A DNA stretch of 64,000 bases from IMG/VR virus record IMGVR_UViG_3300027759_000045, positions 62,001-126,000 of that record; one strand, given 5' to 3'. A program made the position numbers and the translations under genes. Positions 15,274 to 31,876 of the stretch are shown piece by piece; position 1 is the stretch's first letter, and each line of letters begins with the position of its first letter. Under the pieces are notes generated by a model, which made no database searches, was not told the origin of the DNA, and was given only the letters and a program-made list of their open reading frames with translations.

Positions 15274-15482
15274 TGGAAACTAAAAAACGCACAGTGGTCA
15301 GGATGCTGACTTATCGTCTGACTGCATGGCTATTTACAATCTTTTGGACTTATATGTTCACAGGCAACATTGCCAATGCCACAGGTTTTGCTACTGCACT
15401 ACATATTCTTTTAAGTGTTGACTATTACATACATGAACGAATCTGGCTCAAAATCAAATGGGGCAGAATTGACTCAAGATAA
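15273..15482 (+). CDS. DUF2061-like small membrane protein
   Basis: ETKKRT...YR...YYIHERIW.KIKWG pattern with two hydrophobic segments. Confidence 0.75.
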   Translation: METKKRTVVRMLTYRLTAWLFTIFWTYMFTGNIANATGFATALHILLSVDYYIHERIWLKIKWGRIDSR

Positions 15483-17037
15483 TCTCACTGCCAAGCAGAA
15501 TGACTATGCTGTGTTCTTGCCTGCTATATCTGGCTTCTATGCCACGTTCATAGGCAAACAACGTGATCCAGTTAATGGACCTTATATAGAACCTGCACGT
15601 ATGCCACAGGGCATGCCGGATATGGAACAGATGAATTGGCTCAACAGTCAAACAGGTCTGTTCCCATACCGGTGGAGCCTGTATTCAGGCGGCCATGCCA
15701 ACTTGGACTTAAACAAACCGGACTGGTCTGAAGATATGGTTCGCAATCGTGAGCCCGGCACAGTGATCTTAGGTGACTCTGGTGGATTCCAGATTGCTAA
15801 AGGCTTGTGGGAAGGTGACTGGAAAGCCAACTCAGGTTGTGCCAAAGCACAGAAGAAACGTGATGCTGTGCTTAAATGGTTGGATGGTGTGTCTGATTAC
15901 GGCATGATCTTGGATATTCCAACCTGGGTTATTCACGATAAAAAAGCCAGTGCCGCTTGTCAGATTACTACACTGCAAGAAGCAGTTGACGCTACCAAGT
16001 ATAACAACGATTACTTTATGAAACACCGCAAAGGTGTTAAAAATGGCGGTGCCAAGTTCTTAAACGTGTTGCAAGGTGCCAATCATGCTGATGCAGATCG
16101 TTGGTACGACATGATGAAAGAGTATTGTGATCCTGCAAAATATCCCGACACACACTTCAATGGGTGGTCAATGGGCGGACAGAACATGTGCGATGTGCAC
16201 CTGGTGCTACGACGATTGGTGGCACTGCGACATGATAACCTACTACAACCAGGTGTTCATGATTGGATGCACTTCTTGGGCACAAGCAAGTTGGAATGGG
16301 CTGTGTTGCTCACCGTGATTCAAAGGGCAGTACGTAAATATGTGAATCCACAATTTACTATCAGCTTTGATTGTGCCAGCCCATTCCTTGCCACAGCCAA
16401 CGGTCAAGTGTACCACGAGATTGTGTTGCCGCACAACGGCAAGTGGAGTTACAGAATGAATCCTATTGTGGATGACAAGAAGTACGCTGCCGACACACGC
16501 CCATTTAGTCAAGGCGTTGTAGCAGATGGATTGGTTGATACGTTTGAAGACAGTCCTATCAGTCGGCATTTGCAAATGAAAGATATTTGCTACTACCGAC
16601 CCGGTGACCTAAATAAAATTGGCAAAGAAGGCAAGACCAGTTGGGACAGTTTCAGCTATGCATTGCTGATGGGCCATAATGTTTGGTTGCATTTGGAATC
16701 AGTGCAACGTGCCAATCGTGAGTTTGATGCTGGCAACAGGCCCAGGATGATGTGGGACACATGCGGTGACCACACTAAATTTGAGGACATTGTAGAAGCA
16801 ATCTTTGCCACTGCCGATCGTGCAGAAGCAGAAGCTATCATCGAGCAGTATGATCGTTACTGGATGGATATTGTGGGCACACGTGGCTTCAAAGGTAAAA
16901 AGGCCAAAAACGCACACACTCAATTTAATAGTCTGTTCGAAACTGTTGACACAGATACAGAAGATAGTGTACAATTAGATGAAGAGGAATTGTCTGTAGA
17001 TAATTTGGATAAACTTGAACAGGAACAATCTAAATGA
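15469..17037 (+). CDS. dpdA: DpdA / tRNA-guanine-transglycosylase-like base-exchange enzyme
   Basis: ILGDSGGFQ TGT motif, LDIP, HFLG, SFDCASPF; probable TTG start at 15469; pathway genes nearby. Confidence 0.8.
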   Translation: MTQDNLTAKQNDYAVFLPAISGFYATFIGKQRDPVNGPYIEPARMPQGMPDMEQMNWLNSQTGLFPYRWSLYSGGHANLDLNKPDWSEDMVRNREPGTVILGDSGGFQIAKGLWEGDWKANSGCAKAQKKRDAVLKWLDGVSDYGMILDIPTWVIHDKKASAACQITTLQEAVDATKYNNDYFMKHRKGVKNGGAKFLNVLQGANHADADRWYDMMKEYCDPAKYPDTHFNGWSMGGQNMCDVHLVLRRLVALRHDNLLQPGVHDWMHFLGTSKLEWAVLLTVIQRAVRKYVNPQFTISFDCASPFLATANGQVYHEIVLPHNGKWSYRMNPIVDDKKYAADTRPFSQGVVADGLVDTFEDSPISRHLQMKDICYYRPGDLNKIGKEGKTSWDSFSYALLMGHNVWLHLESVQRANREFDAGNRPRMMWDTCGDHTKFEDIVEAIFATADRAEAEAIIEQYDRYWMDIVGTRGFKGKKAKNAHTQFNSLFETVDTDTEDSVQLDEEELSVDNLDKLEQEQSK

Positions 17038-17570
17038 ATAGAGAAGGACACGAAAATGTTAAGTTTTTCACAGGTGTAGAAGTAGAACATACTCCTGCCT
17101 ATGACAAGAAAACATTATTTGTAGTAGGGTTACAGCCAGTCAGTGAAATTCAAGATTGGATAGATGATTTTGCCGCCTATGAAGATGCCGCACAGCACAT
17201 TGAGCACATTTACTTTGGTGCCAATCAGAGCTTTCCTAATCTAAAAGTCAATGACGGTGCTGAGTGGGCCAAGTGGGAAACTATGATTTACCACTTCCTA
17301 GATCGAGACTATGTCTGCACATTAGATGTAGATGTGTCAAGTGTCGAAGGTTTAGTCGAAGGCGGATTTTGTGAACGTCACAACTTCATTCCGATGATTT
17401 CAGTAAAATTACCCTATGTACAACTGCTAGGATACAATGCTACAATCAAGTTAGACGATAAAGATTTTTCAGCCACCAACCCCGGTGTTTGGTGCCATAG
17501 TTTGCATACGTTACAAAATCGAAACAAATTCACTCCATGGTCTAAATACACAAAGGACAAAACAATATGA
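17034..17570 (+). CDS. hypothetical protein coupled between dpdA and dpdL
   Basis: ORF overlapping both neighbours by 4 nt; HIYFGANQSF. Confidence 0.85.
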   Translation: MNREGHENVKFFTGVEVEHTPAYDKKTLFVVGLQPVSEIQDWIDDFAAYEDAAQHIEHIYFGANQSFPNLKVNDGAEWAKWETMIYHFLDRDYVCTLDVDVSSVEGLVEGGFCERHNFIPMISVKLPYVQLLGYNATIKLDDKDFSATNPGVWCHSLHTLQNRNKFTPWSKYTKDKTI

Positions 17571-18025
17571 CACAACGAGAACAAGCACTAGCAGAGCAGG
17601 CTATTAGAATTATGGGTAGTGCGGAACGTAAAATTTGGGTCACGTTCCGCAAAGAAGGGATCCACAAATATCCCGCGGCAGCAACAGACCCTTCATTAGC
17701 AACAGGAGATGAATATGATGTATCGTTTTTGGGCTATCCTCATCGCCATATTTTTCATTTCAGGGTTTGGATTGACGTATTCCACAACGACCGAGATGTG
17801 GAATTTATACAATTCAAGCGATGGCTCGAAAAACTGTATTCTAGCAACCAAGGTGTATTGTCGCTAGATTACAAAAGTTGTGAAATGATCAGCGATGATC
17901 TGTACTTACAAATTGCCGCACGTTACCCCGACCGTGCAGTCTGGATCGAAGTGGCCGAAGATGGCGAGAACGGCGCTTTGATCAAATATGAAATTTCTCG
18001 TCCTAGTCTTAACATTAAAATTTAA
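17567..18025 (+). CDS. dpdL: QueD-paralogous T-fold protein, DpdL-like (putative CDG decarboxylase)
   Basis: LGYPHRHIF fits the LxxxHRHxF motif I recall for DpdL; also DRDVEFI and SCEMIS (T-fold pattern). Confidence 0.65.
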   Translation: MTQREQALAEQAIRIMGSAERKIWVTFRKEGIHKYPAAATDPSLATGDEYDVSFLGYPHRHIFHFRVWIDVFHNDRDVEFIQFKRWLEKLYSSNQGVLSLDYKSCEMISDDLYLQIAARYPDRAVWIEVAEDGENGALIKYEISRPSLNIKI

Positions 18026-18036
18026 AAGGATTTACC

Positions 18037-18258: not shown

Positions 18259-18259
18259 C

Positions 18260-19462
18260 ATGAGAAAACTATACTACATGGGCCTAGAAAGTTACGAAGC
18301 CCGTTACACACTACAACTTACAGAATGGAACCGACGTGTGTTTGACCGTAGAGGTCTTGACGTGGTTTACGTTCCTGGTACAACTATTGATAACAGCCAA
18401 GCAATCAGCGTAGGCCAAGTGCTGGACGCACACGGACGCAGTTACTTTGGCATGAGTCAGATGATGAACTTGGTTCAGATGATGCGTCGAGGTGAAGTTA
18501 CTGGGGAAGATGTTATCTACTTTGAAGACATGTTTCAACCTGGCATCGAGTCCTTGCCATATATATTTGATCAGATTCCTGCTGACCAGCGTCCCAGGGT
18601 ATATGTACGCTGTCTAGCCCAGAGTATTGATCCCGATGACTTTGTGCATGTATGGGGCATGGCCAAGTGGATGGGCCTGTACGAACACATGGTCAATGAG
18701 TTTGTCACCGGAGTTCTCGCCACAAACGAAGAGATGGTTGCTCACATGCGCATTGCCGGATGGCGTGCTCCTATATACAATATTAGTGGCTTGGCATTTG
18801 GTAAAGAAGAAGTGCTAGAGCGCATCGGTGGTGCAGAGAATATCCGACCATTTGGTGAACGCAAACGTCGTGTAGGATTTGCCGCACGATTTGACCAAGA
18901 GAAGCAACCAGACTTCTACATGGACTTGATTGAAATGTATGGCCAGTTGACCAAAGAACCGTGCGAGTTTGCCATCTTCTCTGGTGGTCCTTTACGCAGT
19001 AACAACCCCAAGTATCTTGAACGTGCTAGAATGTACGAACAAGAAGGCAAGTTAAAAATTTATGATAATCTAAGCAAAAATGACTACTATAATCTTGTTA
19101 ATGATACTCGGGTGCTATTCAATTGTGCTTTACAAGACTGGGTATCCAATACTGTTTCTGAAGCCGATACTCTTGGGTGTAATGTGTTATATCCTGCTTA
19201 TCGTAGTTTCCCCGAGACATTCGCTAATGACCCTAATAGGCTCTACGTGCCTTGGAGCATAGATGATGCCTATCACAAGATGCAAAACTTATTGCGCGAT
19301 CCGCATCACAACATGGGCTTGATTTCAGATTGGAACGACGGCACCATTGATCGCGTTATTGACGTCATGACCGGACAAGGCGAGCAATGGAATCGTGCAG
19401 GCAATCGTTATCGCGACCATACTGCACACGAAAAATATCAAGTGAGAAGAATAGAAGAATGA
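18260..19462 (+). CDS. GT-B glycosyltransferase (GT4 / phage DNA glucosyltransferase-like)
   Basis: GFAARFDQEKQP...DWVSNTVSEADTLGCNVLYP (Ex7E-like motif). Confidence 0.75.
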   Translation: MRKLYYMGLESYEARYTLQLTEWNRRVFDRRGLDVVYVPGTTIDNSQAISVGQVLDAHGRSYFGMSQMMNLVQMMRRGEVTGEDVIYFEDMFQPGIESLPYIFDQIPADQRPRVYVRCLAQSIDPDDFVHVWGMAKWMGLYEHMVNEFVTGVLATNEEMVAHMRIAGWRAPIYNISGLAFGKEEVLERIGGAENIRPFGERKRRVGFAARFDQEKQPDFYMDLIEMYGQLTKEPCEFAIFSGGPLRSNNPKYLERARMYEQEGKLKIYDNLSKNDYYNLVNDTRVLFNCALQDWVSNTVSEADTLGCNVLYPAYRSFPETFANDPNRLYVPWSIDDAYHKMQNLLRDPHHNMGLISDWNDGTIDRVIDVMTGQGEQWNRAGNRYRDHTAHEKYQVRRIEE

Positions 19463-19656
19463 CGCCTCGGGAACAAAGTTTCTGCTATCTCAAGCAGTAT
19501 ATTTGTGCTCAAACAACCGCTCCTTGGATTGCCAAAATGAACGACGTAGAAGATCGGGCTCGTTGTGCGTTACAGCACTTGGGTGGCATGGCAGGAGATT
19601 GGTATCCGTATCGTCATGAATGCCAGTACTATTATCCACAAAGGAAACAAGAATGA
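19459..19656 (+). CDS. hypothetical protein, 65 aa
   Basis: ATGA overlaps at both ends. Confidence 0.55.
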   Translation: MTPREQSFCYLKQYICAQTTAPWIAKMNDVEDRARCALQHLGGMAGDWYPYRHECQYYYPQRKQE

Positions 19657-20597
19657 ATGTAGTAGTCACCGGCTCAGCCGGATACATTGGCGGGCAAGTT
19701 GCCTTGCAGTTGAAAGACGCAGGGCATACAGTTTTGGGCATTGACCGTAGACCTTTGCAGCCACATCAAAAAGGTCTACTTGATAGTTTTGTACTGGCAG
19801 ACTTTGATAGTGATACAGCATTTAAAAAGTTATTAAACGTGCGGCCTGATGCCATTGTGCATTGTGCAGGCACCAGTCTGGTTGGCCCTAGCATTAAGAA
19901 TCCAAGTGAGTACTACTTTAACAATGTGGCCAAGACACTGGAGTTGATTACTTTCATAACACGGGCCATGCCTCGGACTAGAATTATCTTTAGTTCTAGT
20001 GCGGCAACCTATGGTGAACCTGTGATGAATCCCATCTGCGAAGTGGATCCAACCGAGCCAGTCAGTCCATATGGACAAAGTAAACTGATGATTGACATGA
20101 TGTTAGAATCGTATCGCCGGGCATACGGGCTTGACTATGTTAGTTTCCGCTACTTTAACGCATGTGGTGCGGATCCCCGAGCCAGACACGGACAAGAACC
20201 CGGCGCTACACACATCATTGCTCGAGTGTTAGAAAGTATTAGAGATGATCAAGAGTTCACACTTTACGGTGATAACTATCCTACCGCAGATGGCACTTGC
20301 ATTCGAGACTATGTACACGTGGATGATATTGCTCGTGCTCATGTGTTGGCGTTGGATCAAACAATTCCTGCAGGCATTTACAATCTTGGGTCAAACACAG
20401 GCACTAGTAATCGTGAAATTATTGCGGCAGCCGAACGTATCACAGGTAAGACATTAAAGTTTACAATAGGAGAACAACGTGTGGGCGATCCTCCTATGCT
20501 GACAGCCAGTGCAGATAAGTTTAATGCTGTGGCCGGTACATGGCAATTGCATAATTTAGATGACATGATTCGTCATGCCTGGGCCTGGTATGTTTGA
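19653..20597 (+). CDS. galE: UDP-glucose 4-epimerase
   Basis: TGSAGYIG, FSSSAATYG, SPYGQSK, RYFNACGAD, DGTCIRDYVHV. Confidence 0.92.
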   Translation: MNVVVTGSAGYIGGQVALQLKDAGHTVLGIDRRPLQPHQKGLLDSFVLADFDSDTAFKKLLNVRPDAIVHCAGTSLVGPSIKNPSEYYFNNVAKTLELITFITRAMPRTRIIFSSSAATYGEPVMNPICEVDPTEPVSPYGQSKLMIDMMLESYRRAYGLDYVSFRYFNACGADPRARHGQEPGATHIIARVLESIRDDQEFTLYGDNYPTADGTCIRDYVHVDDIARAHVLALDQTIPAGIYNLGSNTGTSNREIIAAAERITGKTLKFTIGEQRVGDPPMLTASADKFNAVAGTWQLHNLDDMIRHAWAWYV

Positions 20598-21186
20598 TAA
20601 AATTCTACAATTTGAACAAGCACTAGCAGAGTTTACTGGTGCCCCATATGTGGTCATGACCGATTGCTGTACACACGCCATTGAACTGTGCTTACGTTAC
20701 GACCAAGTTACAGAGTGTAGGTTTACTCCGTACACTTACTTGAGCATCCCAATGACCATGCACAAGCTGGGCATCAAATACAAACTACTAGACCACGAAT
20801 GGCAACGCTGGGTCGGTGAATACCCATTTCTCGAAACACGTATCTGGGATTCAGCACGTAGACTTGAAAAGGACATGTACCGCGAAGGTACAATGCAATG
20901 TTTGAGTTTTGGGCATGGCAAACCTTTGCAGATCGGACGTGGCGGAGCAATCTTGCTAGATGATGTTGTTGCATACGATACCATGTTGGCTCAAAGGTAC
21001 GATGGTAGAGATTTGACTATTACGCCATGGGAATCGCAACAGGTGTTCCGAGTGGGGTATCATTACAAACCCACAATCGAAGAAGCTGTACAAGGACTTG
21101 CACTACTCGAAGGTGTCAAACAAAATCGGCCCGTGCCAATACCGGTTGATTACCCAGATTGCAGAAAAATAACTATTGTTCCTTGA
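20590..21186 (+). CDS. short DegT/DnrJ/EryC1/StrS-like PLP aminotransferase
   Basis: FEQALAEFTGAPYVV..DCCTHAIEL...WDSA...LSFGHGKPLQIGRGGAI. Confidence 0.7.
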   Translation: MFDKILQFEQALAEFTGAPYVVMTDCCTHAIELCLRYDQVTECRFTPYTYLSIPMTMHKLGIKYKLLDHEWQRWVGEYPFLETRIWDSARRLEKDMYREGTMQCLSFGHGKPLQIGRGGAILLDDVVAYDTMLAQRYDGRDLTITPWESQQVFRVGYHYKPTIEEAVQGLALLEGVKQNRPVPIPVDYPDCRKITIVP

Positions 21187-21211
21187 CACTGACCTAAATA
21201 CCCTGTATAAT
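21183..21211 (+). promoter_or_regulatory. consensus sigma70 promoter with nested TAAATA
   Basis: TTGACA-N17-TATAAT; TAAATA at 21195-21200. Confidence 0.9.
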
Positions 21212-21252
21212 AACACAATGGCAATCCACTGCCTTAACATCGGAGACTATGA

Positions 21253-22083
21253 TTGAAAAAAGAATTTGCACCAGATCCAGTATTTCACTCGGATACTAAA
21301 AAGAAGTTTATACCAGACCGCCTGGACCACAATGCCACAGAGCCATCCCCAATTACCACAGCAACTGAAATTATGTCAGACAAAGATTACCAAGAAGGTT
21401 ACCTAGGCGATGCCATTCGCTTTAAGATGAAACGTGACAACAAACGTTTCTGGGCAGGCGATAATATCAGTGACTACCTGCACGAAGGTGATCGAGAACG
21501 ACTAATTGACGAAGCCTCAGAAGCATTTGAGACAGTGCTGGATCGGTTGTTGATCGATCGTGAAACAGATCCCAACTCAAAAGGCACAGCAAGACGTTTG
21601 GCCAAAATGTACTTTAATGAAATAATGGCAGGAAGATATGAACCAGAACCAGATGCAACCGCTTTCCCTAATGACTCAGCGGATCGATATGAAGGAATGC
21701 TTGTGGTGCGTAGTGAGCTTCGCAGTATGTGCAGTCATCACCACCAACCTGTCAGTGGCGTTGCTTATATCGGGATTATTGCCGCTCAAAAGCTCATTGG
21801 CCTTAGCAAGTACACTCGTATTGCTCAGTGGTGTGCTCGTCGTGGCACACTACAAGAAGAACTTGCTAATGACATTGCCCGCGAGATAATGCGGGCCACA
21901 GATGCCACAGACGTTGGTGTGTATATTCAAGCAGTGCATGGATGTTGCGAGAATCGCGGCATCATGGCACATAGTAGCCTCACACAGACCACAGTGCTTA
22001 AAGGTGCGTTTAACACAGATCAAAGTACAAAGAAAGAATTCTTTGACAATATCAAACTACAACAGGACTTTGCTCCACGATGA
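21253..22083 (+). CDS. folE: GTP cyclohydrolase I
   Basis: [30 protein letters not shown]; TTG start after GGAG. Confidence 0.95.
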
Positions 22084-22412
22084 CCTATGTTGTAACTGAC
22101 GACTGCATTTTATGCAAACACACAGACTGTGTTGATGTGTGTCCTGTGGATTGCTTTGTAGAAGGTCCAAACTTTTTGGCCATCAATCCGGATGAGTGCA
22201 TTGACTGTGCAGTGTGCGTTCCAGAATGTCCGGTAAATGCAATTTATGCTGAAGAGGATCTACCGGAAACGCAACGTGCATTTACAGTCATCAATGCTGA
22301 ACTGGCAAAGCTATGGCCTGCTATTACCAAAAGTAAGGCACCGCTGCCAGACCATGAAAAATGGACCAACGTGCCCGATAAACTACAGTACCTAGACCGT
22401 GGCACAGCGTAA
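22080..22412 (+). CDS. fdxA: 7Fe ferredoxin (FdxA type)
   Basis: [18 protein letters not shown]...[12 protein letters not shown]. Confidence 0.93.
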
Positions 22413-22998
22413 AAACTTTGTTGTCTACGGACACGGGAGAACCGGCAGCCACTGGGTTGAATCAATTCTAATCGGATTGTTGGCACCAACTTCATTCCGG
22501 TATTCAAACTGTTCTCTTTTGCCCGACGGCTGGATATATCACACCAACCACATTCAAGAGTTATTGGAAATACCTCGAGAGATACGAGATTCTGTCACAT
22601 TGATTGTGTGTGATAGGTCAAATTATTTTGATGCGGCCGTCAGTTACAATGTAGCAAAACATACAGATGAATTTTTTACTTACACAGATACCCCAGTGGC
22701 GCCATTCAATGTGGATCCTGACGACTTTACAAATTTATTAAATGCACAGCACCATACATATCAATTGGTTGGTTCAGAAGTCATACCAAGGTACAACAGT
22801 GTGATACGCATCGACTACGACAGTTTGGTAGCTGCCGCTGTTCCGGAAAAGTATGTGGCCGACCAATTGGGTGTTGATTACACAGTAAATTCCGAGTACA
22901 CGCACCAAAGTGTTAAAAACCCAAGAAATTACAAAGATTTAATTTTAAATTGGGAAGAATTGTACCAACTTTATCAAGAATGGCTAGTTGACCACTAA
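22399..22998 (+). CDS. sulfotransferase-like P-loop protein
   Basis: [17 protein letters not shown]-binding-like motif. Confidence 0.65.
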
Positions 22999-23016
22999 TT
23001 CTTAATTTGTTATAAT
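22988..23016 (+). promoter_or_regulatory. sigma70-type promoter
   Basis: TTGACC-N17-TATAAT. Confidence 0.75.
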
Positions 23017-23050
23017 ACGTGTACATTGAACAACTCTTGGTGGAAATATT

Positions 23051-24295: not shown

Positions 24296-24305
24296 AGGAT
24301 CAACT

Positions 24306-24725
24306 ATGAGTTTACCGCACACAAAAGAAATCATTCCGGGAATCGGCCCAGAGATTAATAAACAACTTGCACCGTGGACTGAACTGGTTCGAGAGGACTT
24401 TCATGTTCAAGTATTTGAAGATATCTATCCTGTGACTCCGGGACACTTGTTATTCGTACCTAAATACAACACAGTAGGTGTGCTGATGGATGCTGTACAA
24501 GATGCAATCTATCACGGGCAGGCGCAGGTCGAATCGGGTGCCTGGGATGGATTTAACATTGGATTAAACTATGGTTCGGCAGCCGGGCAGACAGTGCCTT
24601 GGCCACATGTACACTTGATTCCTCGTCTGACAGGTGATGTTGCTGACCCTATTGGCGGTGTCCGAAATACAATTCCCGGGCAAGGTAACTATCGCACAGG
24701 TAGTTATAAACACCCCAATGCGTAA
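24306..24725 (+). CDS. HIT family nucleotide hydrolase
   Basis: DIYPVTPGHLLFVP...GFNIGLN.G.AAGQTVPWPHVHLIPR. Confidence 0.9.
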   Translation: MSLPHTKEIIPGIGPEINKQLAPWTELVREDFHVQVFEDIYPVTPGHLLFVPKYNTVGVLMDAVQDAIYHGQAQVESGAWDGFNIGLNYGSAAGQTVPWPHVHLIPRLTGDVADPIGGVRNTIPGQGNYRTGSYKHPNA

Positions 24726-25652: not shown

Positions 25653-25656
25653 TCTC

Positions 25657-25722: not shown

Positions 25723-25727
25723 AAATA

Positions 25728-26234
25728 ATGGCACAATTTGAATCAGTACAATACAAATACACTTCTACCAAGGAGTATCACGATGCGTTTCCCTGCGCAT
25801 ATCGGCAATGGCGAGCAGACAGTCACTGTAATCTAATTCACGGTTACAGCTTCAGTATGAAGTTCTACTTTGGTACTAATGACCTAGATGTGCGTAACTG
25901 GGCCGCTGACTACGGTGGGCTTAAAGAGCTCAAGAAGACCTTGGAAGATCAATTTGATCATACATTGATTGTGGCAGCGGATGATCCTGAAATGGCCACA
26001 TATAACTTGTTGGTAGAAAAGAAAATGGCCAAGGTAGTTGTGTTACCAAAATTAGGATGTGAAGGTCTCAGTGACATGCTGTACAAGTATGTGAATGGGG
26101 TTTACGTTCCAGAAATGTGGGGACCCGGAGAGGCCACTCGTTTGTGGTGCTATCGTGTAGAAGTGCGTGAAACACAAGCCAACATGGCGTATCGTGAAGG
26201 GCATCGTGAATGGAATGAGGATCTGTTTGCGTGA
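25728..26234 (+). CDS. queD: 6-carboxy-tetrahydropterin synthase / PTPS family
   Basis: SHCNLIHGYS...DYGGLKELK..LEDQFDH...VEVRET. Confidence 0.88.
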   Translation: MAQFESVQYKYTSTKEYHDAFPCAYRQWRADSHCNLIHGYSFSMKFYFGTNDLDVRNWAADYGGLKELKKTLEDQFDHTLIVAADDPEMATYNLLVEKKMAKVVVLPKLGCEGLSDMLYKYVNGVYVPEMWGPGEATRLWCYRVEVRETQANMAYREGHREWNEDLFA

Positions 26235-26851
26235 ACTTGTTTGTAACCGGTGGCAGTTCTGGTGTTGGTCAAGCATGTGTAGAACTGTTTGATCAATACA
26301 CAATTACAGCACCAACAAGGAACGAACTAGATTTGTCTGACTTTGAAGCAATAGCTCAATTGGATTTATCTCAGTACGATATTGTTATCAACTGTGCAGG
26401 TGCCAATGTAGGTGCATTTCGGGGCTGGCAAGATAATACTTGGCAAAATCAGCAAAATCAAGTTGATGTAAACTTCACTGGTGCATTGCTGTTGGCCAAG
26501 CAATACGTTAAGCAACGTGCCACCGGACATTTCATTTATATCACCAGCAGTAACATCGATGATCCCATTGTGTATAACATATTTTACACTGCTGCCAAGG
26601 CCGCACTGCATTACAGTATGAATACAGTGAAGAAACAGTATCCCGATGTGCTCTTTACAGAAATCAGGCCTGGTAAAATACGTAGTAATATGTTAAATCA
26701 AAATTATCAAGGTGCAAAAACTCCTGATGAAATCGAAGAACTCTATGCCAAAGGGCCTGCACTGGCACCTGCAGATATTGCCGAGGCCATTGCGACTGCT
26801 ATTAAATACAAGATAGAACAAATCACAATAACTCCCCATGACAAATCGTGA
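26231..26851 (+). CDS. short-chain dehydrogenase/reductase
   Basis: VTGGSSGVG, INCAG, YTAAK. Confidence 0.9.
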   Translation: MNLFVTGGSSGVGQACVELFDQYTITAPTRNELDLSDFEAIAQLDLSQYDIVINCAGANVGAFRGWQDNTWQNQQNQVDVNFTGALLLAKQYVKQRATGHFIYITSSNIDDPIVYNIFYTAAKAALHYSMNTVKKQYPDVLFTEIRPGKIRSNMLNQNYQGAKTPDEIEELYAKGPALAPADIAEAIATAIKYKIEQITITPHDKS

Positions 26852-27659
26852 ATTTAAAATAGCTGTACTACTTCCCACGCACAAACGAACAGATGCACTG
26901 AGCCGCAGTGTGTTTAGTCTGCTGGATAATGCCCACGACTTGAGTCAAATACAATTTGTGTTTGGTATTGACAGTAACGATGAAATTGGACGTGAACATT
27001 TTGTCAATGAAATTCAACCTGTATTAGATGAACGAGATGTGACATATACCGCACTGGAGTTTGAACCTTTGGGTTACGGAGCACTCAATCGTTATTTTAA
27101 CACACTGGCTGAACATGCCAACGCTGATTGGTTGTTTGTTTGGTGTGACGACGCTATCATGTCAACCCAGGCATGGGATCAACGCATCATCGAATGCACA
27201 GGCGAGTTCAAGTTGTTAAAAGTGCATACACACAACGAGCATCCTTATAGCATATTTCCCATTATACCTGCAGAGTGGCCAGAGCTAACAGGTTATCTTA
27301 GCAAGCATCAATTGATCGATGCTGAAGTTAGTCAAATGGCCTACTTGCTGGACATAATGAAAATTATCGAAGTAGATGTCACACACGATCGTCATGATCT
27401 AACTGGTAATAATGCAGATGAAAATGCCAAAAAGAAAAAGTACTTTGAAGGCAATCCAAAAAATCCCGAAGACTTCCATAACAAGTATGTTACACACAAT
27501 CGGCTTGTGGATGTGAACAAATTGTTCAAATATATGAAGTCCAAGAATCTTGACACTAGTCATTGGGAGGCAGCGGTCGCAGGAAAAATTGATCCATGGG
27601 CACTTATGAAGGCCAATGATCCAAACAATCAAACAACACAATTTAAACTTCCAAAATGA
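26838..27659 (+). CDS. GT-A (GT2-like) glycosyltransferase
   Basis: VLLPTHKR...WLFVWCDDA. Confidence 0.8.
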   Translation: MTNREFKIAVLLPTHKRTDALSRSVFSLLDNAHDLSQIQFVFGIDSNDEIGREHFVNEIQPVLDERDVTYTALEFEPLGYGALNRYFNTLAEHANADWLFVWCDDAIMSTQAWDQRIIECTGEFKLLKVHTHNEHPYSIFPIIPAEWPELTGYLSKHQLIDAEVSQMAYLLDIMKIIEVDVTHDRHDLTGNNADENAKKKKYFEGNPKNPEDFHNKYVTHNRLVDVNKLFKYMKSKNLDTSHWEAAVAGKIDPWALMKANDPNNQTTQFKLPK

Positions 27660-28888
27660 CAACAGACATAACACACAGCAGACAGTTAGACACATGTTTA
27701 ATCACCACAGAACCAGTGACCAAGGTATTGGACTTTGGGCAACACGCCTACGCAGACACGTTTGTGTCCCGGGATCAGTTGAATCTAAGTGAGCCAGTAT
27801 TTCCTTTACAAGTTCATTTAAATCCCAACTCAGGCATGTTGCAATTAGGATATGTCAGCAATGCCGAAGCAAGATATAACCTGTACAGTTACAGTTACAC
27901 ATCCAGCAACTCAAAGACAGCAAGAGATCACTGGGACGAGTTTGCCGCAACTATCAAATCAAAATATAACACTGCGGGTCTTGTGGTTGAAATTGGCAGT
28001 AACGATGCATACCTAATTCGACAATTCAACAATGAATCAACTGCCACACTGGGAATTGATTCAAGCAGTGCAATGTGTGCTATTGCACAAGAGCAAGGTG
28101 TTACAGCACTACAGGCATTATTTCATCCTAATGTTGCTTATGATCTTGTTCCCAAATATGGTCGTGCCGCGGTTGTTATTGCCAACAATGTGTTTAACCA
28201 TGCTAACGATCCCGTGGAGTTTGCACATGGTGTAAGTTTCTTGCTGGACAAGGATGGTGTATTTGTGTTTGAAGTTCCTTACTGGCTGGAAATGGTCTAC
28301 AGTGGTCGTTTTACAGACATGGTGTACCACGAACATATCAGTTATTTTACCATCAAGAGCCTACATAATCTGTTGGCCATTGCTGGGTTAGAAATTATCG
28401 ACTTTGATGTGGTCGACTATCACGGTGGTAGTCTGCGTGTGGTGGCAAAGAAAGCCAGCGGCAATCCAATATCTGAAAAAGTCGCGCAGGCCATTGTTAA
28501 AGAAACTGAACTGGGGTTGTTTGATGTGGTCTTTTATGCTGGTTTGCAGAAAAGATTTGAACGTCAACGCAATGAATGGATGTCCAAGTTCTATCAAATA
28601 CTACAAGACGAGCCTGGTGCAGTTGTTATCGGCGTAGGTGCTGCCGCCAAAGCAAACACATGGCTTGCATGGCACGGCCTAAATAAAACACACCTGCATT
28701 GTATTACCGATGCCAGCGAACACAAGCAAGGTAAGTATACTCCACTTAGCCGTATACCAATCTTGGACGATAATGAATTTGCAAAGCATCCTACCCCATA
28801 TGCTCTAATCTTAAGTTGGAACATTGGCGAAGGTCTTAAGCGAGCATTATTACGCATCAATCCCAACACAAGGTTTATATCACAATGA
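27656..28888 (+). CDS. NDP-sugar C-methyltransferase family
   Basis: VVEIGSNDA, ANNVFNH, YHEHISYF, HGGSLR, GAAAKANT, KQGKYTP, ILSWN. Confidence 0.88.
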   Translation: MTTDITHSRQLDTCLITTEPVTKVLDFGQHAYADTFVSRDQLNLSEPVFPLQVHLNPNSGMLQLGYVSNAEARYNLYSYSYTSSNSKTARDHWDEFAATIKSKYNTAGLVVEIGSNDAYLIRQFNNESTATLGIDSSSAMCAIAQEQGVTALQALFHPNVAYDLVPKYGRAAVVIANNVFNHANDPVEFAHGVSFLLDKDGVFVFEVPYWLEMVYSGRFTDMVYHEHISYFTIKSLHNLLAIAGLEIIDFDVVDYHGGSLRVVAKKASGNPISEKVAQAIVKETELGLFDVVFYAGLQKRFERQRNEWMSKFYQILQDEPGAVVIGVGAAAKANTWLAWHGLNKTHLHCITDASEHKQGKYTPLSRIPILDDNEFAKHPTPYALILSWNIGEGLKRALLRINPNTRFISQ

Positions 28889-29301
28889 AACAATACAACA
28901 TTTACAACAACAACGAAACAGGTCTAGGAACGTTCACCGACGATCGTGGCACAATCACTGATATCTTTTACAAAGCCAGTGTTAATCACGCCTGTTTGAT
29001 TACCAACACAGCCGGGGCAGTGCGCGGCAATCACTATCACAAATACACTACTCAATATACCTATGTGCTCACAGGCAGCATGGTGTATTACAGTAAACCC
29101 GTAGACAGTGATGGAACGCCTACAGAATTCTTAGCCAGAAAAGGTGACTTTATTATCAGTCCACCCAATGAGATTCATGCCATGCAAACCACCGTGGATG
29201 GCTGTACATTTATTGCGTTTGCCGAAGGTCCACGTGGCGGCGAAGATTATGAAACCGACACATACAGAGTGGATTCAATCATTCCGGGAGATAGCAAATG
29301 A
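28885..29301 (+). CDS. cupin, sugar epimerase/isomerase-like
   Basis: DDRGTI...GAVRGNHYHK...PNEIHAM. Confidence 0.8.
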   Translation: MKQYNIYNNNETGLGTFTDDRGTITDIFYKASVNHACLITNTAGAVRGNHYHKYTTQYTYVLTGSMVYYSKPVDSDGTPTEFLARKGDFIISPPNEIHAMQTTVDGCTFIAFAEGPRGGEDYETDTYRVDSIIPGDSK

Positions 29302-30071
29302 ACGTGGGCGTAATTGGAAAAGGTACTGTTGGCAAAGCAGTGTACGAAGGACTAGAGTATCTGGGACATAACATGTGCTTCTTTGATCCTGCATACGAAG
29401 GATCCTCTATCATGGACGTTGTAGACGCTGATTGTGTTTTTGTCAGTGTGCCAACTAATCAAGCAGCCAACGGCGACTGCGATACATCTATTGTAGAAAA
29501 TGTAATCAAAGACTTGGATGGATTAAACTACAAAGGATTGATTGCGGTCAAAAGTACAGTGGTTCCGGGCACAAGCGAACGACTCAGTGCAGAATATCCA
29601 CGCATGAAAATCTGTAGTGTGCCGGAGTTCCTACGTGCCAAGACAGCACTGGCAGACTTTATTCACAATCATGACCTGTTGGTCATTGGCAGTCACCGCG
29701 AAGAAGACTTTGAATTGATCAAAAAGATTCATGGTTTCTATCCCAAGCATGTGGCCTGCGTTAAACCTACAGAAGCAGAAATTGTCAAGTATTTCAACAA
29801 CGTACACCATGCCATGCAAGTGACCTTTGCCAACGTCACTTATGAAGTGTGTCAAAAACTAGATGCCAACTACATGAATGTGTACAATGCCATCACACAA
29901 CGTGATTGTATTAATCCTGCATATTTGATGGCCAATAAAAACACACGTGGCTATGGCGGCCATTGTTTGCCCAAAGATACCAGTGCCTGGAATAACTTGA
30001 TCAAGAAACTGGGTCTTGACTTTAACCTGATTCAAAGTGTAATCGACGACAACGAGAAATTTATCAAATGA
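29298..30071 (+). CDS. ugd: UDP-glucose/GDP-mannose 6-dehydrogenase family
   Basis: GKGTVG, VKSTVVPGT, PEFLR, EIVKYFNN, GYGGHCLPKD. Confidence 0.9.
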   Translation: MNVGVIGKGTVGKAVYEGLEYLGHNMCFFDPAYEGSSIMDVVDADCVFVSVPTNQAANGDCDTSIVENVIKDLDGLNYKGLIAVKSTVVPGTSERLSAEYPRMKICSVPEFLRAKTALADFIHNHDLLVIGSHREEDFELIKKIHGFYPKHVACVKPTEAEIVKYFNNVHHAMQVTFANVTYEVCQKLDANYMNVYNAITQRDCINPAYLMANKNTRGYGGHCLPKDTSAWNNLIKKLGLDFNLIQSVIDDNEKFIK

Positions 30072-30979
30072 AAATATTAGTAACCGGTGCCAGCGGCTTA
30101 TTGGGCACAGAAATTTGCCGACAACTCAAACACGATAAAAAAAATGTAGTATGGGCCATGGACAACCATAGTCGCAGTTCAACTATACCACTCTGTGACA
30201 AGTTTATCGACGTAGACTTGACTGCTGGCGATGTGGCCTACGCAGACTTGCCTGTGGACTTTGATTACATCTATCACTATGGTGCAATCAACGGAACCAA
30301 AAACTTTTACGAGCGTCCCAACCAAGTGTTATGGAACAACATGGTGGGCGACTTCAATGTGTTTGAATTTGCTGGCATGAATAAACAGTTAAAAAAACTA
30401 GTGTATGCTTCCAGCAGTGAAGTGGTAAGCGACGATCCTGTTAGCCCTGTGGCCGAGCACACAGACATCACAATCAACAATATCCACAATGCCAGATGGA
30501 GTTATCGTTTGCCCAAGATCTGTGCGGAAAACTATTTGGCCAACTCACCGTTGCCCTATGTGATGATACGTTACTTTAACGTGTACGGTGACAACAGCAA
30601 GGCCGGTCATTTCTTAGCAGATCAAATTGCCAAGATTCAAAATGGTGTATTTGAAGTTGTTGGCCCCGAAGAAACACGCAGTTTTTGTCATGTAGAAGAT
30701 GCTGTTCGAGCCACGATATTCTGCGCCAAAACACAAACACGTGAACTGTTCAATATTGGTAACGATAGAGAAATTACCATTCGAGATGCAGTAAAAGTCA
30801 TTGCTGAAGAACTGGGCCACACCGACCCTGAGTGGACTACTTCTCCTGGCAAGGCCGGCAGTACTGCAACACGTAGACCCAACATTGCCAAACTGAGATC
30901 CGTCATGTCCGATTATAAACCAATGTCCTTTGAGCAAGGTGTCAAACGAATTGTTAAGAATTTAGTTGACAAGTCTTAA
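30068..30979 (+). CDS. NAD-dependent epimerase/dehydratase (UDP-glucuronate decarboxylase-like)
   Basis: TGASGLLG, YASSSEV, RWSYRLPK, RYFNVYG, RSFCHVED. Confidence 0.88.
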   Translation: MKILVTGASGLLGTEICRQLKHDKKNVVWAMDNHSRSSTIPLCDKFIDVDLTAGDVAYADLPVDFDYIYHYGAINGTKNFYERPNQVLWNNMVGDFNVFEFAGMNKQLKKLVYASSSEVVSDDPVSPVAEHTDITINNIHNARWSYRLPKICAENYLANSPLPYVMIRYFNVYGDNSKAGHFLADQIAKIQNGVFEVVGPEETRSFCHVEDAVRATIFCAKTQTRELFNIGNDREITIRDAVKVIAEELGHTDPEWTTSPGKAGSTATRRPNIAKLRSVMSDYKPMSFEQGVKRIVKNLVDKS

Positions 30980-30995
30980 ACAATTATCGTATAAT
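30966..30995 (+). promoter_or_regulatory. sigma70-type promoter; ATG only 5 nt after the -10 box
   Basis: TTGACA-N18-TATAAT. Confidence 0.65.
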
Positions 30996-31000
30996 AGTGT

Positions 31001-31876
31001 ATGAAATTAAAAGTATCTGAACTATTCTATTCGGCACAAGGCGAAGGACGCTTTGTTGGTGTACCCAGTGTGTTTCTGCGCACATTCGGTTGTAACTTTA
31101 AGTGTGCTGGCTTTGGTATGCCACCGGGTGAAGTGAGTCACGAAGCCACTGACATTGCGGCCACACACACTATGATTCAACCGTTTGCAAAGTTTGAAGA
31201 CTTGCCGTTGGTCAATACTGGCTGCGACAGTTATGCCAGTTGGCATCCAGACTTTAAAGACCTAAGTCCAACTATTGATACTGACAAGTTGGTGGATCAG
31301 ATGCTGGCACGGACACCCAATCACAAGTGGATGCAAGACAACGGCAATGACGTACACTTGGTTATCACAGGCGGCGAACCCTTGCTGGGTTGGCAACGCA
31401 CATACGAAGAGTTGATCGGTAATCCTGGCATGAGTGATCTACGTAATATTACATTTGAAACCAATGGCACTCAAAAATTACAACCTAGTTTTAAAAACTT
31501 CATGCACGAGTGGAGTCGGAATCCCCCATTTGTTTCTAGAGAAGTTACATTTTCAGTCAGTGCTAAACTCAGTGCCAGTGGCGAAAAGTGGGAAGAAGCT
31601 ATCTGTCCCGACATTGTTGCAAGTTATCAAGACATTGGTACCACTTATCTTAAATTTGTTGTGGAAACAACAGAACACTTTGCAGAAGTTGAACGTGCGG
31701 TAAAAGAATTTAGAGACGGCGGCTTTACTGGTGTTGTATATGTCATGCCACAGGGCGGTGTAGTTACTCCGTATGCACAAAATCGTGTACGAGTAGCCGA
31801 CTGGGCTTGCAGTAAGGGCTATTACTATAGTCCTCGCCTACACGTTGACCTTTGGGGCAATGGGTGGGGAAAATAA
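31001..31876 (+). CDS. queE: 7-carboxy-7-deazaguanine synthase (radical SAM)
   Basis: SELFYSAQGEG..VG.PSVFLRTFGCNFKC...GCDS, ITGGEPLL, ETNGT, PRLHV. Confidence 0.9.
   Translation: MKLKVSELFYSAQGEGRFVGVPSVFLRTFGCNFKCAGFGMPPGEVSHEATDIAATHTMIQPFAKFEDLPLVNTGCDSYASWHPDFKDLSPTIDTDKLVDQMLARTPNHKWMQDNGNDVHLVITGGEPLLGWQRTYEELIGNPGMSDLRNITFETNGTQKLQPSFKNFMHEWSRNPPFVSREVTFSVSAKLSASGEKWEEAICPDIVASYQDIGTTYLKFVVETTEHFAEVERAVKEFRDGGFTGVVYVMPQGGVVTPYAQNRVRVADWACSKGYYYSPRLHVDLWGNGWGK

What the first reader, a model, noticed from the sequence alone, without database searches (positions are those of the whole stretch)
15469..31876. 7-deazaguanine DNA modification pathway predicted to end at unsubstituted 7-deazaguanine
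Seen: TGT-like gene (DSGGFQ), LxxxHRHxF T-fold gene, folE, queD and queE, spread over 16 kb. No queC, queF or Gat-QueC was seen in the window. Known: FolE-QueD-QueE make CDG; DpdA enzymes insert deazaguanines into DNA; from recollection DpdL decarboxylates CDG. Inference: genomic G is partly replaced by dDG (or dCDG) to resist restriction. The ~520-aa DpdA is longer than typical TGTs and may be a distinct subfamily.
Basis: partly seen in the sequence, partly recalled or inferred. Interest (0 to 1): 0.7.

Follow-up and report, generated by a model that had tools for sequence, protein, structure and literature searches.

The report
QueC-less deazaguanine DNA module plus glycosyltransferase

Summary
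FolE (21253-22083), QueD (25728-26234), QueE (31001-31876), a DpdL with the exact LxxxHRHxF signature (17567-18025) and a TGT-fold protein (15415/15469-17037) are all present. The complete 346,856-bp genome has no QueC, QueF or Pfam-type TGT.

The TGT-like protein escapes the Pfam, PHROG, NCBIfam and PADLOC models. Its AlphaFold model (pLDDT 89) matches tRNA-guanine transglycosylases at Z 17-18, and its family profile aligns to the validated DpdA2 of Vibrio phage VH7D (96% probability). It is a divergent DpdA clade shared with Pseudomonas jumbo phage PA5oct.

The interpretation (dDG or dCDG) is only partly supported. A GT4 glycosyltransferase (18260-19462) sits beside DpdL here and in ACP17, PA5oct, Phosso, Xanthomonas X1/BUDD, BCSR5 and cyanophage BUCT-ZZ01. 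A 178-aa unknown protein is shared with ACP17 and PA5oct. GalE, a short DegT-like protein and a second glycosyltransferase are conserved in relatives, and the QueD-QueE interval holds a swappable NDP-sugar cassette.

The core is a new member of a known system. The conserved link to a glycosyltransferase was not discussed in the papers I read, and it suggests a glycosylated deazaguanine. This needs mass spectrometry.

The parts
15415..17037 (+). Divergent DpdA-type guanine transglycosylase (540 aa from the GTG start; alternative starts ATG 15433 and TTG 15469). Carries DSGGFQ (D121-Q126), LDIPT (D167), HFLG (H286) and SFDCASP (D319); acidic, disordered C-terminal ~50 aa.
   Evidence: No hit in Pfam, PHROG, NCBIfam, PADLOC or PDB by sequence. 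AF2 model pLDDT 89. The Foldseek top 50 are all TGT at probability 1.0. VIA Z 17-18 over ~305 residues. hhalign gives 96.7% to ACP17 gp123 and 96.4% to VH7D DpdA2. Invariant residues are listed.
17034..17570 (+). p178, a conserved protein of unknown function. Homologues are ACP17 gp122 (directly upstream of that phage's DpdA) and PA5oct EST35_0364.
   Evidence: blastp/tblastn: 43% identity to PA5oct, 32% to ACP17. Present in all related loci. AF2 pLDDT 80 with no convincing fold match, best Z 6.5.
17567..18025 (+). DpdL, a QueD-like T-fold paralogue proposed to be a CDG decarboxylase. Motif LGYPHRHIFHF.
   Evidence: phrog_17812 E 2e-36. tblastn: 58% to the ACP17 DpdL, 35% to the phiST DpdL. 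Motif and shared His/Glu residues in alignment A4. Family definition in PMC10516641.
18037..18258 (+). p73, a small conserved ORF between DpdL and GT4. Function unknown.
   Evidence: Conserved at 55-100% identity in related loci. No family hit.
18260..19462 (+). GT4-type (GT-B, retaining) glycosyltransferase, the only Glycos_transf_1 gene in the genome. Its homologues lie next to DpdL in seven other phage lineages.
   Evidence: Pfam Glycos_transf_1 at 20.9 bits, below the cut-off; the X1 homologue scores 45.5 bits, above it. D/E-x7-E motif and invariant R..EK.P. PDB profile hits are GT4 enzymes. Synteny. Single copy in the genome.
19620..20597 (+). GalE, UDP-glucose 4-epimerase.
   Evidence: NCBIfam TIGR01179 at 293 bits, above the cut-off of 262. 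Conserved directly after GT4 in related loci.
20575..21186 (+). Short (203 aa) DegT/DnrJ-like protein, half the normal length but conserved.
   Evidence: Pfam DegT_DnrJ_EryC1 E 6e-12. 55-100% identity in relatives.
21253..22083 (+). FolE, GTP cyclohydrolase I, with an ~80-aa N-terminal extension.
   Evidence: Pfam E 2e-39, phrog_2197 E 4e-44.
22080..22412 (+). 7Fe-type ferredoxin (Fer4 + DUF3470). A possible reductant for the radical-SAM QueE (inferred).
   Evidence: Pfam DUF3470 E 4e-18, Fer4. Present in only part of the relatives.
24264..24725 (+). HIT-family protein, conserved just upstream of QueD in the lineage. Role unknown.
   Evidence: Pfam HIT E 1.5e-8. Conserved in G001-G005.
25728..26234 (+). 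QueD-like CPH4 synthase (motif CNLIHGY, that is CxxxHGY, as in the ACP17 and phiST QueD).
   Evidence: Pfam PTPS E 8e-15, phrog_2389 E 1e-34. 48% identity to the ACP17 QueD. Alignment A4.
26231..30979 (+). NDP-sugar tailoring cassette: SDR (26231-26851), glycosyltransferase GT273 (26838-27659), sugar C-methyltransferase (27656-28888), cupin (28885-29301), truncated UDP-glucose dehydrogenase-like protein (29298-30071) and epimerase/dehydratase (30068-30979).
   Evidence: Pfam, PHROG and NCBIfam hits. Same cassette in G001, G004 and G005; replaced by other sugar genes in G002 and G003.
31001..31876 (+). QueE, the radical-SAM CDG synthase.
   Evidence: phrog_2076 E 2e-49. NCBIfam QueE models match the N-terminal signature but score below their cut-offs.
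31845..32987 (+). MetK, S-adenosylmethionine synthetase, overlapping the end of QueE. Probably supplies SAM (inferred).
   Evidence: All three Pfam S-AdoMet_synt domains, E 1e-32 to 2e-58.

Best explanation
This is a DpdL-type, QueC-less 7-deazaguanine DNA-modification module in an uncultured freshwater jumbo phage that is distantly related to Pseudomonas phage PA5oct.

Proposed pathway:
1. FolE, QueD and QueE convert GTP to 7-carboxy-7-deazaguanine (CDG). The neighbouring ferredoxin and MetK plausibly supply electrons and SAM.
2. Because the genome lacks QueC, the pathway cannot reach preQ0, ADG, preQ1 or G+.
3. DpdL, probably a metal-dependent decarboxylase, is expected to turn CDG into 7-deazaguanine.
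4. A divergent DpdA, nearest to the DpdA2 subfamily, exchanges genomic guanines for that base after replication.
5. A GT4 glycosyltransferase and the unknown p178 are conserved partners of DpdL and DpdA. I infer that they complete the reaction, most likely by adding a sugar to the deazaguanine in DNA or to the free base. GalE would supply the donor, and the variable NDP-sugar cassette may diversify the sugar.

What is shown: gene identities, the TGT fold, the motifs, the genome-wide absence of QueC and QueF, and the synteny. What is inferred: DNA rather than tRNA as the target, decarboxylation by DpdL, and any role of GT4, p178 or the sugar genes in the modification.
For: - Gene identities.
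- No QueC, QueF or Pfam TGT in the complete genome.
- DpdA: TGT fold; profile match to the validated DpdA2 running from the DSGG motif to the nucleophile Asp; invariant D121, S122, G124, D319.
- DpdL: motif and homology to the named DpdLs.
- The arrangement PolB...DpdA-GT4-DpdL...QueE is shared with PA5oct. PA5oct DNA resists G-containing restriction sites and is targeted by nucleases specific for modified G (PMC12191111).
- The four-gene set p178/DpdA/GT4/DpdL also occurs in ACP17.
- GT4 lies next to or near DpdL in Phosso, X1/BUDD, BCSR5 and BUCT-ZZ01.
- 18 of 28 DpdL-positive phage records carry this GT4 subfamily, and it was not found in DpdA2 phages that lack DpdL.
- Gene order is conserved in 80 related loci and in five long relatives.
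- There is no ThyA-family hydroxymethylase that could give GT4 a hydroxymethyl-pyrimidine target.
- Chemical precedent: GT4-type enzymes N-glycosylate the 2-amino group of 7-deazapurines in huimycin and dapiramicin.
Against: - No chemical data exist for this phage or for any GT4-carrying relative.
- DpdL activity has never been demonstrated.
- In phiST, which lacks this GT4, the product is plain dDG. DpdL-type systems therefore do not need a glycosyltransferase.
- RHph_I1_18 and Ahp1 have DpdL with no detectable GT4 within 8 kb.
- 7-Deazaguanine has no obvious hydroxyl acceptor.
- The sugar genes could be an unrelated cargo island, for example for virion or host-surface glycans, that happens to sit among accessory genes.
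- The GT4 here scores below Pfam's cut-off.
- The phage encodes its own Asp, Asn, His and Tyr tRNAs, so a tRNA role for the transglycosylase is not excluded.
Confidence: 0.7

Rival explanations
1. The pathway ends at unsubstituted 2'-deoxy-7-deazaguanosine (dDG), as in Cellulophaga phage phiST. GT4, p178 and the sugar genes would have nothing to do with DNA and would serve virion, host-envelope or other glycans.
For: phiST has FolE, QueD, QueE, DpdL and a DpdA, and dDG fully replaces dG there (PMC10516641). The same five functions are present here. The sugar cassette is variable, like a cargo island. DG offers no hydroxyl for glycosylation.
Against: GT4 is adjacent to DpdL or DpdA in eight phage lineages from different families and hosts. 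It is the only GT-B gene in this genome. Co-expressing dpdL and dpdA from ACP17, a GT4-carrying phage, gave no dDG, and the authors themselves suggested missing enzymes.
Confidence: 0.3
2. DpdL is not a decarboxylase, and the base inserted is CDG itself (dCDG) or a carboxyl-derived conjugate, such as an ester or amide with a sugar or amino sugar.
For: CDG is the last product the recognised enzymes can make without QueC. VH7D DpdA2 can insert CDG at low efficiency, and dCDG occurs in the virus STSV-2 (PMC10516641). The lineage conserves a DegT-like protein, a HIT protein and glycosyltransferases that could act on a carboxylate.
Against: The only DpdL-encoding phage analysed (phiST) contained dDG and no dCDG. 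The DpdL here keeps the family's signature and metal ligands. The DegT-like protein is half the normal length.
Confidence: 0.12
3. The TGT-like enzyme modifies tRNA, either the phage's own GUN-anticodon tRNAs or host tRNAs, rather than DNA.
For: The fold is that of tRNA-guanine transglycosylases. The phage encodes tRNA-Asp, -Asn, -His and -Tyr with GUN anticodons.
Against: There is no match to the Pfam TGT model. No cysteine is invariant in the family, so the TGT zinc site does not appear to be conserved. The nearest characterised relative by profile is a DNA-acting DpdA2. There is no QueC or QueF to make preQ1, the bacterial TGT substrate. The gene sits next to the DNA polymerase, as it does in PA5oct, ACP17 and X1, and PA5oct DNA behaves as G-modified.
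Confidence: 0.05

Closest known systems
DpdL-type dDG system of Cellulophaga phage phiST (FolE, QueD, QueE, DpdL, DpdA3; Hutinet et al. 2023, PMC10516641)
   Same: The same QueC-less logic applies. DpdL carries the LxxxHRHxF signature (35% identity), and FolE, QueD (CxxxHGY type) and QueE are homologous.
   Different: The transglycosylase here is not a DpdA3 (259 aa); the hhalign match to it is only 70% probability over 83 columns. phiST lacks the GT4 and p178 partners, has a MazG instead, and has no sugar genes.
Acidovorax phage ACP17 cluster gp119-gp126 (QueD, FolE, gp122, gp123 DpdA, gp124, gp125 DpdL, QueE)
   Same: All four module genes have homologues here: gp122 = p178, gp123 = DpdA (hhalign 96.7%), gp124 = GT4, and gp125 = DpdL (58% identity). 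Both clusters lie next to PolB.
   Different: The ACP17 DpdA belongs with the Vibrio DpdA2 proteins (34-36% identity), whereas ours is detectable only by profile comparison. Gene order differs. ACP17 has no GalE or NDP-sugar cassette.
Pseudomonas jumbo phage PA5oct (Wroclawvirus) EST35_0316-0322
   Same: It is the closest cultured relative of this DpdA clade (32% identity over 95% of the protein). It shares the PolB-structural protein-DpdA-GT4-DpdL...QueE-RNaseH synteny. Its DNA is reported as G-modified (PMC12191111), and a deazaguanine system was noted for it in PMC7824862.
   Different: PA5oct has no large sugar cassette in this interval. Its p178 homologue lies 26 kb away. Its DpdL motif reads HFH rather than HRH.
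DpdA2 of Vibrio phage VH7D (experimentally validated DNA transglycosylase)
   Same: The profile alignment runs from DSGGxQ to the S-[FY]-D catalytic Asp at 96.4% probability. Size is similar, 458 versus 522-540 aa.
   Different: There is no pairwise BLAST similarity. VH7D uses preQ1 and preQ0 and has QueC and QueF; it has no DpdL or GT4.
Huimycin/dapiramicin glycosyltransferases (HuiG) and eukaryotic QTMAN
   Same: GT-B/GT4-type enzymes that put sugars on 7-deazaguanine derivatives. HuiG acts on the 2-amino group of a free base, and QTMAN acts on queuosine in tRNA (an Atlas lead).
   Different: No specific homology was shown. Those enzymes act on a secondary metabolite or on tRNA, not on DNA.

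Membership tests
DpdA (7-deazaguanine DNA transglycosylase, TGT superfamily) | TGT-type (beta/alpha)8 barrel fold | tested here: met
   AF2 pLDDT 89. Foldseek top 50 are all TGT at probability 1.0. VIA Z 17-18 with ~305 aligned residues to bacterial, archaeal and human TGT.
DpdA (7-deazaguanine DNA transglycosylase, TGT superfamily) | Catalytic aspartates: the DSGG(F/L)Q motif Asp and the nucleophile Asp in the S-x-D motif | tested here: met
   D121, S122, G124 and D319 are invariant in 57 family members. They align with the same motifs of VH7D DpdA2 and ACP17 gp123.
DpdA (7-deazaguanine DNA transglycosylase, TGT superfamily) | Recognition by existing family HMMs (Pfam PF01702 TGT, the PADLOC Dpd models) | tested here: not met
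   No hit. Membership rests on fold and profile-profile evidence only.
DpdA (7-deazaguanine DNA transglycosylase, TGT superfamily) | Homology to an experimentally validated DpdA | tested here: met
   hhalign of A1 against VH7D DpdA2: probability 96.4%, E 1e-9, 171 columns. VH7D activity is reported in PMC10516641.
DpdA (7-deazaguanine DNA transglycosylase, TGT superfamily) | Exchanges guanine in DNA (not tRNA) for a 7-deazaguanine | not testable with these tools
   Needs an enzyme assay or nucleoside mass spectrometry.
Bacterial tRNA-guanine transglycosylase (bTGT) | Zinc site (CxCxxC...H) and a match to the TGT family model | tested here: not met
   No invariant cysteine in alignment A1. No PF01702 match in the protein or the genome.
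DpdL (proposed CDG decarboxylase, QueD paralogue) | Signature LxxxHRHxF in place of QueD's CxxxHGH | tested here: met
   LGYPHRHIFHF. The definition is in PMC10516641.
DpdL (proposed CDG decarboxylase, QueD paralogue) | Sequence homology to the named DpdL proteins of phiST and ACP17 | tested here: met
   tblastn: 58% identity (E 2e-39) to ACP17 and 35% (E 3e-10) to phiST.
DpdL (proposed CDG decarboxylase, QueD paralogue) | Genomic context: FolE, QueD, QueE and a DpdA present, QueC absent | tested here: met
   on the whole complete genome.
DpdL (proposed CDG decarboxylase, QueD paralogue) | Decarboxylates CDG to 7-deazaguanine | not testable with these tools
   Unproven even for the founding members.
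QueD / QueE / FolE (CDG synthesis) | Family HMM matches | tested here: met
   Pfam and PHROG matches are strong. NCBIfam equivalog cut-offs are not reached. QueD has CxxxHGY, as in other phage QueDs.
GT4 retaining glycosyltransferases (GT-B) | Glycos_transf_1 domain and E-x7-E motif | tested here: inconclusive
   The window protein scores 20.9 bits against a cut-off of 26.4. Homologues reach 26.5 bits (BUCT-ZZ01) and 45.5 bits (X1). A D/E-x7-E motif and an R..EK.P motif are conserved. PDB profile hits are GT4 enzymes at E 1e-5.
QTMAN (tRNA-queuosine mannosyltransferase) | QTMAN_N (PF12038) N-terminal domain | tested here: not met
   No match in the genome at E <= 10 or in the homologues. The only link is a language-model neighbourhood score of 0.97.

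The most novel reading that the evidence does not exclude
In this lineage and in ACP17, PA5oct, Phosso, X1, BCSR5 and BUCT-ZZ01, the DpdL-type pathway may not stop at 7-deazaguanine. The conserved GT4, possibly with p178, would glycosylate the deazaguanine, for example on N2 as in huimycin or on the electron-rich C7. That would give the first sugar-bearing purine in any DNA. The swappable NDP-sugar cassette between QueD and QueE would diversify the sugar among phage strains under pressure from modification-dependent host nucleases.
Probability: 0.3. Interest if true: 0.85.

Novelty: new variant of a known kind. Interest (0 to 1): 0.58.

Why it matters
7-Deazaguanines are the main known purine modifications of phage DNA, and they defeat many restriction systems. 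Three points follow from this work.

1. The DpdL-type branch is far more widespread than the few cultured phages suggest. The DpdA clade found here has over 900 representatives at 50% identity clustering, in lake and ocean metagenomes. Current HMMs miss it, so surveys will undercount it.
2. The conserved partners GT4 and p178 are concrete candidates for the "missing enzymes" that would explain why dpdL plus dpdA could not be reconstituted in E. coli.
3. If GT4 acts on the base, this would be a glycosylated purine in DNA, a chemistry known so far only for pyrimidines. The strain-variable sugar cassette would be the counterpart of the variable glucosylation and arabinosylation of T-even phages.

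Cultured phages with the same module (PA5oct, ACP17, BUCT-ZZ01) make the question directly testable.

Tried and rejected
- Sequence-only identification of the TGT-like protein failed. Pfam, PHROG, NCBIfam, PADLOC, PDB phmmer and a PDB search with the family profile all found nothing meaningful.
- Megablast of the 17-kb region against phage genomes gave no match.
- p178: no family hit. Atlas neighbours (PHP_C) scored only 0.90. Fold searches gave at best Z 6.5 (STAS domain) or a Z 5.6 partial-barrel match to QueE, with no convincing AFDB cluster apart from one unnamed entry (33% identity, Foldseek E 2e-12, TM 0.67), which gives no function. Its function stays unknown. Phosso gp222, annotated as a glycosylase, is not a p178 homologue.
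- Complex prediction of DpdA with p178 returned no verdict (score 0.00). It is not evidence either way.
- The QTMAN lead for GT4 was not confirmed: there is no QTMAN_N domain.
- A second homologous-protein search, on GT4, returned only >86% identical sequences and added no diversity.
The job was rerun with only the window and IMG/VR rows.
- A pre-replicative route through a phosphoribosyltransferase, as BUCT-ZZ01's gene suggests, was considered. No PRTase is present in this genome.
- Glycosylation of hydroxymethyl-pyrimidines was considered as the role of GT4. No ThyA-family gene is present.
- Laying reads showed only that the phage and many strain variants occur in lake metagenomes, plus two short exact metatranscriptome contigs. 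This does not inform on the modification.
- The supplementary tables of PMC10516641, which give the DpdA subfamily assignment of ACP17, are not held.

Full report
**Context.** The window is bases 62001-126000 of a single 346,856-bp virus contig with direct terminal repeats and a CheckV completeness of 100%. It is a jumbo phage. Nearly identical sequence and many strain variants occur in freshwater and lake metagenomes. The flagged region lies just downstream of a family-B DNA polymerase (10874-13531), on the + strand, in tightly packed and often overlapping genes.

**Observation.**
- FolE, 21253-22083: Pfam GTP_cyclohydroI E 2e-39, phrog_2197 E 4e-44.
- QueD, 25728-26234: Pfam PTPS E 8e-15, phrog_2389 E 1e-34. 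Its motif is CxxxHGY, as in the QueDs of ACP17 and phiST.
- QueE, 31001-31876: phrog_2076 E 2e-49. NCBIfam QueE models match its N-terminal signature but score below their cut-offs.
- These identifications rest.
- The 152-aa ORF at 17567-18025 carries LGYPHRHIFHF. This is exactly the LxxxHRHxF signature that Hutinet et al. 2023 (PMC10516641) use to tell DpdL from QueD. It is 58% identical to the DpdL of Acidovorax phage ACP17 and 35% to that of Cellulophaga phage phiST.
- Searches of the whole genome with PF06508 (QueC), PF14489 (QueF), PF01702 (TGT) and PF00156 (phosphoribosyltransferase) found nothing, while the control genomes matched.

**The transglycosylase.** ORF 15415-17037 (540 aa, or 522 aa from the TTG at 15469) has no match in Pfam, PHROG, NCBIfam, PADLOC or PDB sequences.
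- It belongs to a very large metagenomic family: more than 7,000 clusters at 90% identity and 943 representatives at 50%.
- An alignment of 57 diverse members has invariant S91, D121, S122, G124, P169, H286 and D319. These fall in the motifs DSGGFQ, HFLG and S-F-D-C-A-S-P.
- The AlphaFold2 model is confident (pLDDT 89, pTM 0.89).
- Foldseek's best 50 PDB matches are all tRNA-guanine transglycosylases at probability 1.0.
- VIA-align gives Z 17-18 over about 305 residues to bacterial TGT, archaeosine TGT and human QTRT1.
- Profile-profile comparison aligns the family, from the DSGG motif through the nucleophile aspartate, to ACP17 gp123 (96.7%) and to VH7D DpdA2 (96.4%).
- VH7D DpdA2 was shown experimentally to insert preQ1, preQ0 and some CDG into DNA (PMC10516641). 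The match to phiST DpdA3 is weaker (70%).
- ACP17 gp123 itself is 34-36% identical to the Vibrio DpdA2 proteins.
- The only cultured phages with pairwise-detectable homologues of the window protein are the PA5oct group (32% over 95% of the length), Sinorhizobium phage Phosso and one Vibrio phage.

I conclude that this is a DpdA-type enzyme of a divergent clade nearest to DpdA2. Its length is not exceptional, but current HMMs do not see it. No cysteine is invariant in the family, so the zinc site of canonical TGT does not appear to be conserved.

**Synteny.** The corresponding PA5oct region reads DNA polymerase, structural protein, small ORF, DpdA homologue, a 353-aa protein, DpdL, three small ORFs, QueE, two ORFs, RNase H. 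BLAST links each of these to the window.
- The 353-aa protein matches the window's 400-aa ORF at 18260-19462.
- In ACP17 the four consecutive genes gp122-gp125 correspond to p178 (17034-17570), DpdA, the 400-aa protein and DpdL.
- The 400-aa protein is a GT4-type glycosyltransferase. Glycos_transf_1 matches all homologues: above the cut-off for Xanthomonas X1 (45.5 bits) and just above it for BUCT-ZZ01 (26.5 bits), and below it here (20.9 bits).
- The family conserves a D/E-x7-E motif and an R..EK.P motif. Its profile finds GT4 enzymes in the PDB.
- Homologues lie beside or near DpdL in Phosso (DpdL then GT4), X1 and BUDD (GT4, DpdA, DpdL, QueE), BCSR5 (GT4 about 3 kb from DpdL), and the freshwater cyanophage BUCT-ZZ01 (DpdL then GT4, 68% identical to ours).
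- Of the 28 phage records with a DpdL, 18 carry this GT4 subfamily.
- It was not detected in the DpdA2 phages that lack DpdL.
- It was also not detected near DpdL in phiST, RHph_I1_18 or Ahp1.
- A weaker group of hits, in PhiXhv-type Xanthomonas phages, sits in an unrelated GlmS context.
- It is the only Glycos_transf_1 gene in this genome.

**The rest of the 16 kb.** The remaining genes, by interval:
- Between GT4 and FolE: GalE (TIGR01179 293 bits, above its cut-off) and a 203-aa DegT-like protein.
- After FolE: a 7Fe ferredoxin, a 199-aa unknown, a GH113-like protein, a HIT protein and a TauD-family dioxygenase.
- After QueD: an SDR, a second glycosyltransferase (phrog_14945), a sugar C-methyltransferase, a cupin, a truncated UDP-glucose dehydrogenase-like protein and an epimerase/dehydratase.
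- After QueE: MetK.

Conservation of this gene set in relatives:
- In 80 related IMG/VR loci (DpdA identity 73-100%) the order PolB, methyltransferase-like, structural protein, DpdA, p178, DpdL, p73, GT4, GalE, short DegT, FolE ... HIT, QueD is kept wherever the contig reaches.
- In five long relatives the DpdA-QueE span ranges from 14.7 to 22.4 kb.
- Three of them keep the same QueD-QueE sugar cassette.
- One replaces it with a 4,6-dehydratase, two methyltransferases, a full-length DegT, a transketolase-like protein and another epimerase.
- Another replaces it with a B12-radical-SAM enzyme and a second copy of the glycosyltransferase.

Sugar-nucleotide tailoring genes are therefore a constant, strain-variable feature wedged between the deazaguanine genes.

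**Mechanism.**
- *Shown:* the enzymes to make CDG are present; the enzymes to go further along the canonical route are absent; DpdL and a DpdA-type transglycosylase are present.
- *From the literature:* phiST, which has the same core, carries dDG in place of all dG. DpdL is the proposed but unproven decarboxylase. PA5oct DNA resists enzymes with G in their sites and is attacked by nucleases that sense modified G (PMC12191111). A deazaguanine system in PA5oct was already noted in PMC7824862.
- *Inferred:* this phage replaces G with a CDG-derived 7-deazaguanine after replication. The ferredoxin and MetK support QueE. GT4 and p178 belong to the pathway.

The inference about GT4 and p178 rests on conserved adjacency across unrelated phage families. 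It also rests on the reported failure to obtain dDG from the ACP17 dpdL and dpdA genes alone. The genome has no ThyA-type hydroxymethylase that would offer a pyrimidine acceptor. GT4-type enzymes that N-glycosylate the 2-amino group of 7-deazapurines in huimycin and dapiramicin provide a chemical precedent. No data show what GT4 modifies.

**Rivals.** The four alternatives and my probabilities:
- Plain dDG with unrelated sugar genes: 0.3.
- dCDG or a carboxyl conjugate: 0.12.
- A tRNA-only role: 0.05. The phage does encode all four GUN tRNAs among its 27 tRNAs. However, the enzyme lacks the bTGT hallmarks, and its substrate preQ1 cannot be made.
- Some 7-deazaguanine in DNA, of whatever final form: I hold this at about 0.8-0.85.

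**Novelty and verdict.** The core is a new, uncultured and environmentally abundant member of the DpdL-type system described in 2023. Its DpdA clade is shared with PA5oct. The papers I could read do not discuss the conserved GT4 and p178 partnership or the interleaved, swappable sugar cassette. These make this a variant worth testing. Interest is 0.58. The glycosylated-deazaguanine reading has a probability of about 0.3 and would be of high interest if true.

Noticed in passing
window 40805-54353 (tmRNA 48821-49310): An array of 27 tRNA genes, including Asp, Asn, His and Tyr with GUN anticodons, plus a permuted (two-piece type) tmRNA called by ARAGORN. Permuted tmRNAs are typical of alpha-proteobacteria and cyanobacteria (from my own knowledge), so this may hint at the host.
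   Followed up: partly
window 26231-30979; relatives L102 (G002) and L104 (G003): The QueD-QueE interval is a swappable NDP-sugar cassette. Three relatives keep the window's set. One has a 4,6-dehydratase, two methyltransferases, a full-length DegT, a transketolase-N-like protein and an epimerase. Another has a 641-aa B12-binding radical-SAM enzyme and a duplicated glycosyltransferase.
   Followed up: partly
window 22080-24295; L101:8109-10619, L105:9641-12127: Where this phage has ferredoxin, p199 and a GH113-like protein between FolE and HIT, relatives carry a ~830-aa protein with FG-GAP repeats.
   Followed up: partly
window 16880-17037 (DpdA residues ~489-540): The transglycosylase ends in a strongly acidic tail that is predicted to be disordered (pLDDT < 50). 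It recalls the acidic C-termini of phage ssDNA-binding and replisome proteins, and the gene sits next to the DNA polymerase.
   Followed up: no
window 20575-21186 and 29298-30071: Two sugar enzymes are truncated yet conserved in relatives: a DegT-like protein of 203 aa (normal ~370) and a UDP-glucose-dehydrogenase-like protein of 257 aa that lacks the N-terminal Rossmann start and the C-terminal domain. They may be repurposed rather than decayed.
   Followed up: partly
L084:4093-4554 (Synechococcus phage BUCT-ZZ01): This cyanophage, whose GT4 is 68% identical to the window's, has an annotated xanthine-guanine phosphoribosyltransferase between QueE and QueD. That hints at a nucleotide-level, possibly pre-replicative, route in some DpdL/GT4 phages. 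No such gene exists in the window's genome.
   Followed up: partly
L001:10763-11140 (PA5oct DpdL): The PA5oct DpdL reads LGYPHFHYF, with HFH in place of the HRH of the family signature.
   Followed up: no
window 13535-14500: A methyltransferase-like gene lies between PolB and the structural-protein homologue. Its position is conserved but it evolves very fast (29-100% identity among relatives whose DpdA is 73-100% identical).
   Followed up: no
window 5724-6860 and 61544-63949: A radical-SAM/SPASM protein lies upstream of the polymerase. A MoxR-type AAA ATPase followed by a DUF2201 metallopeptidase/VWA protein lies at the end of the window.
   Followed up: no
window 17425-17588 and 18860-19010: Two short contigs from a lake metatranscriptome match exactly, one across the p178/DpdL junction and one inside GT4. 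This is weak evidence of transcription, and DNA carry-over is not excluded.
   Followed up: partly
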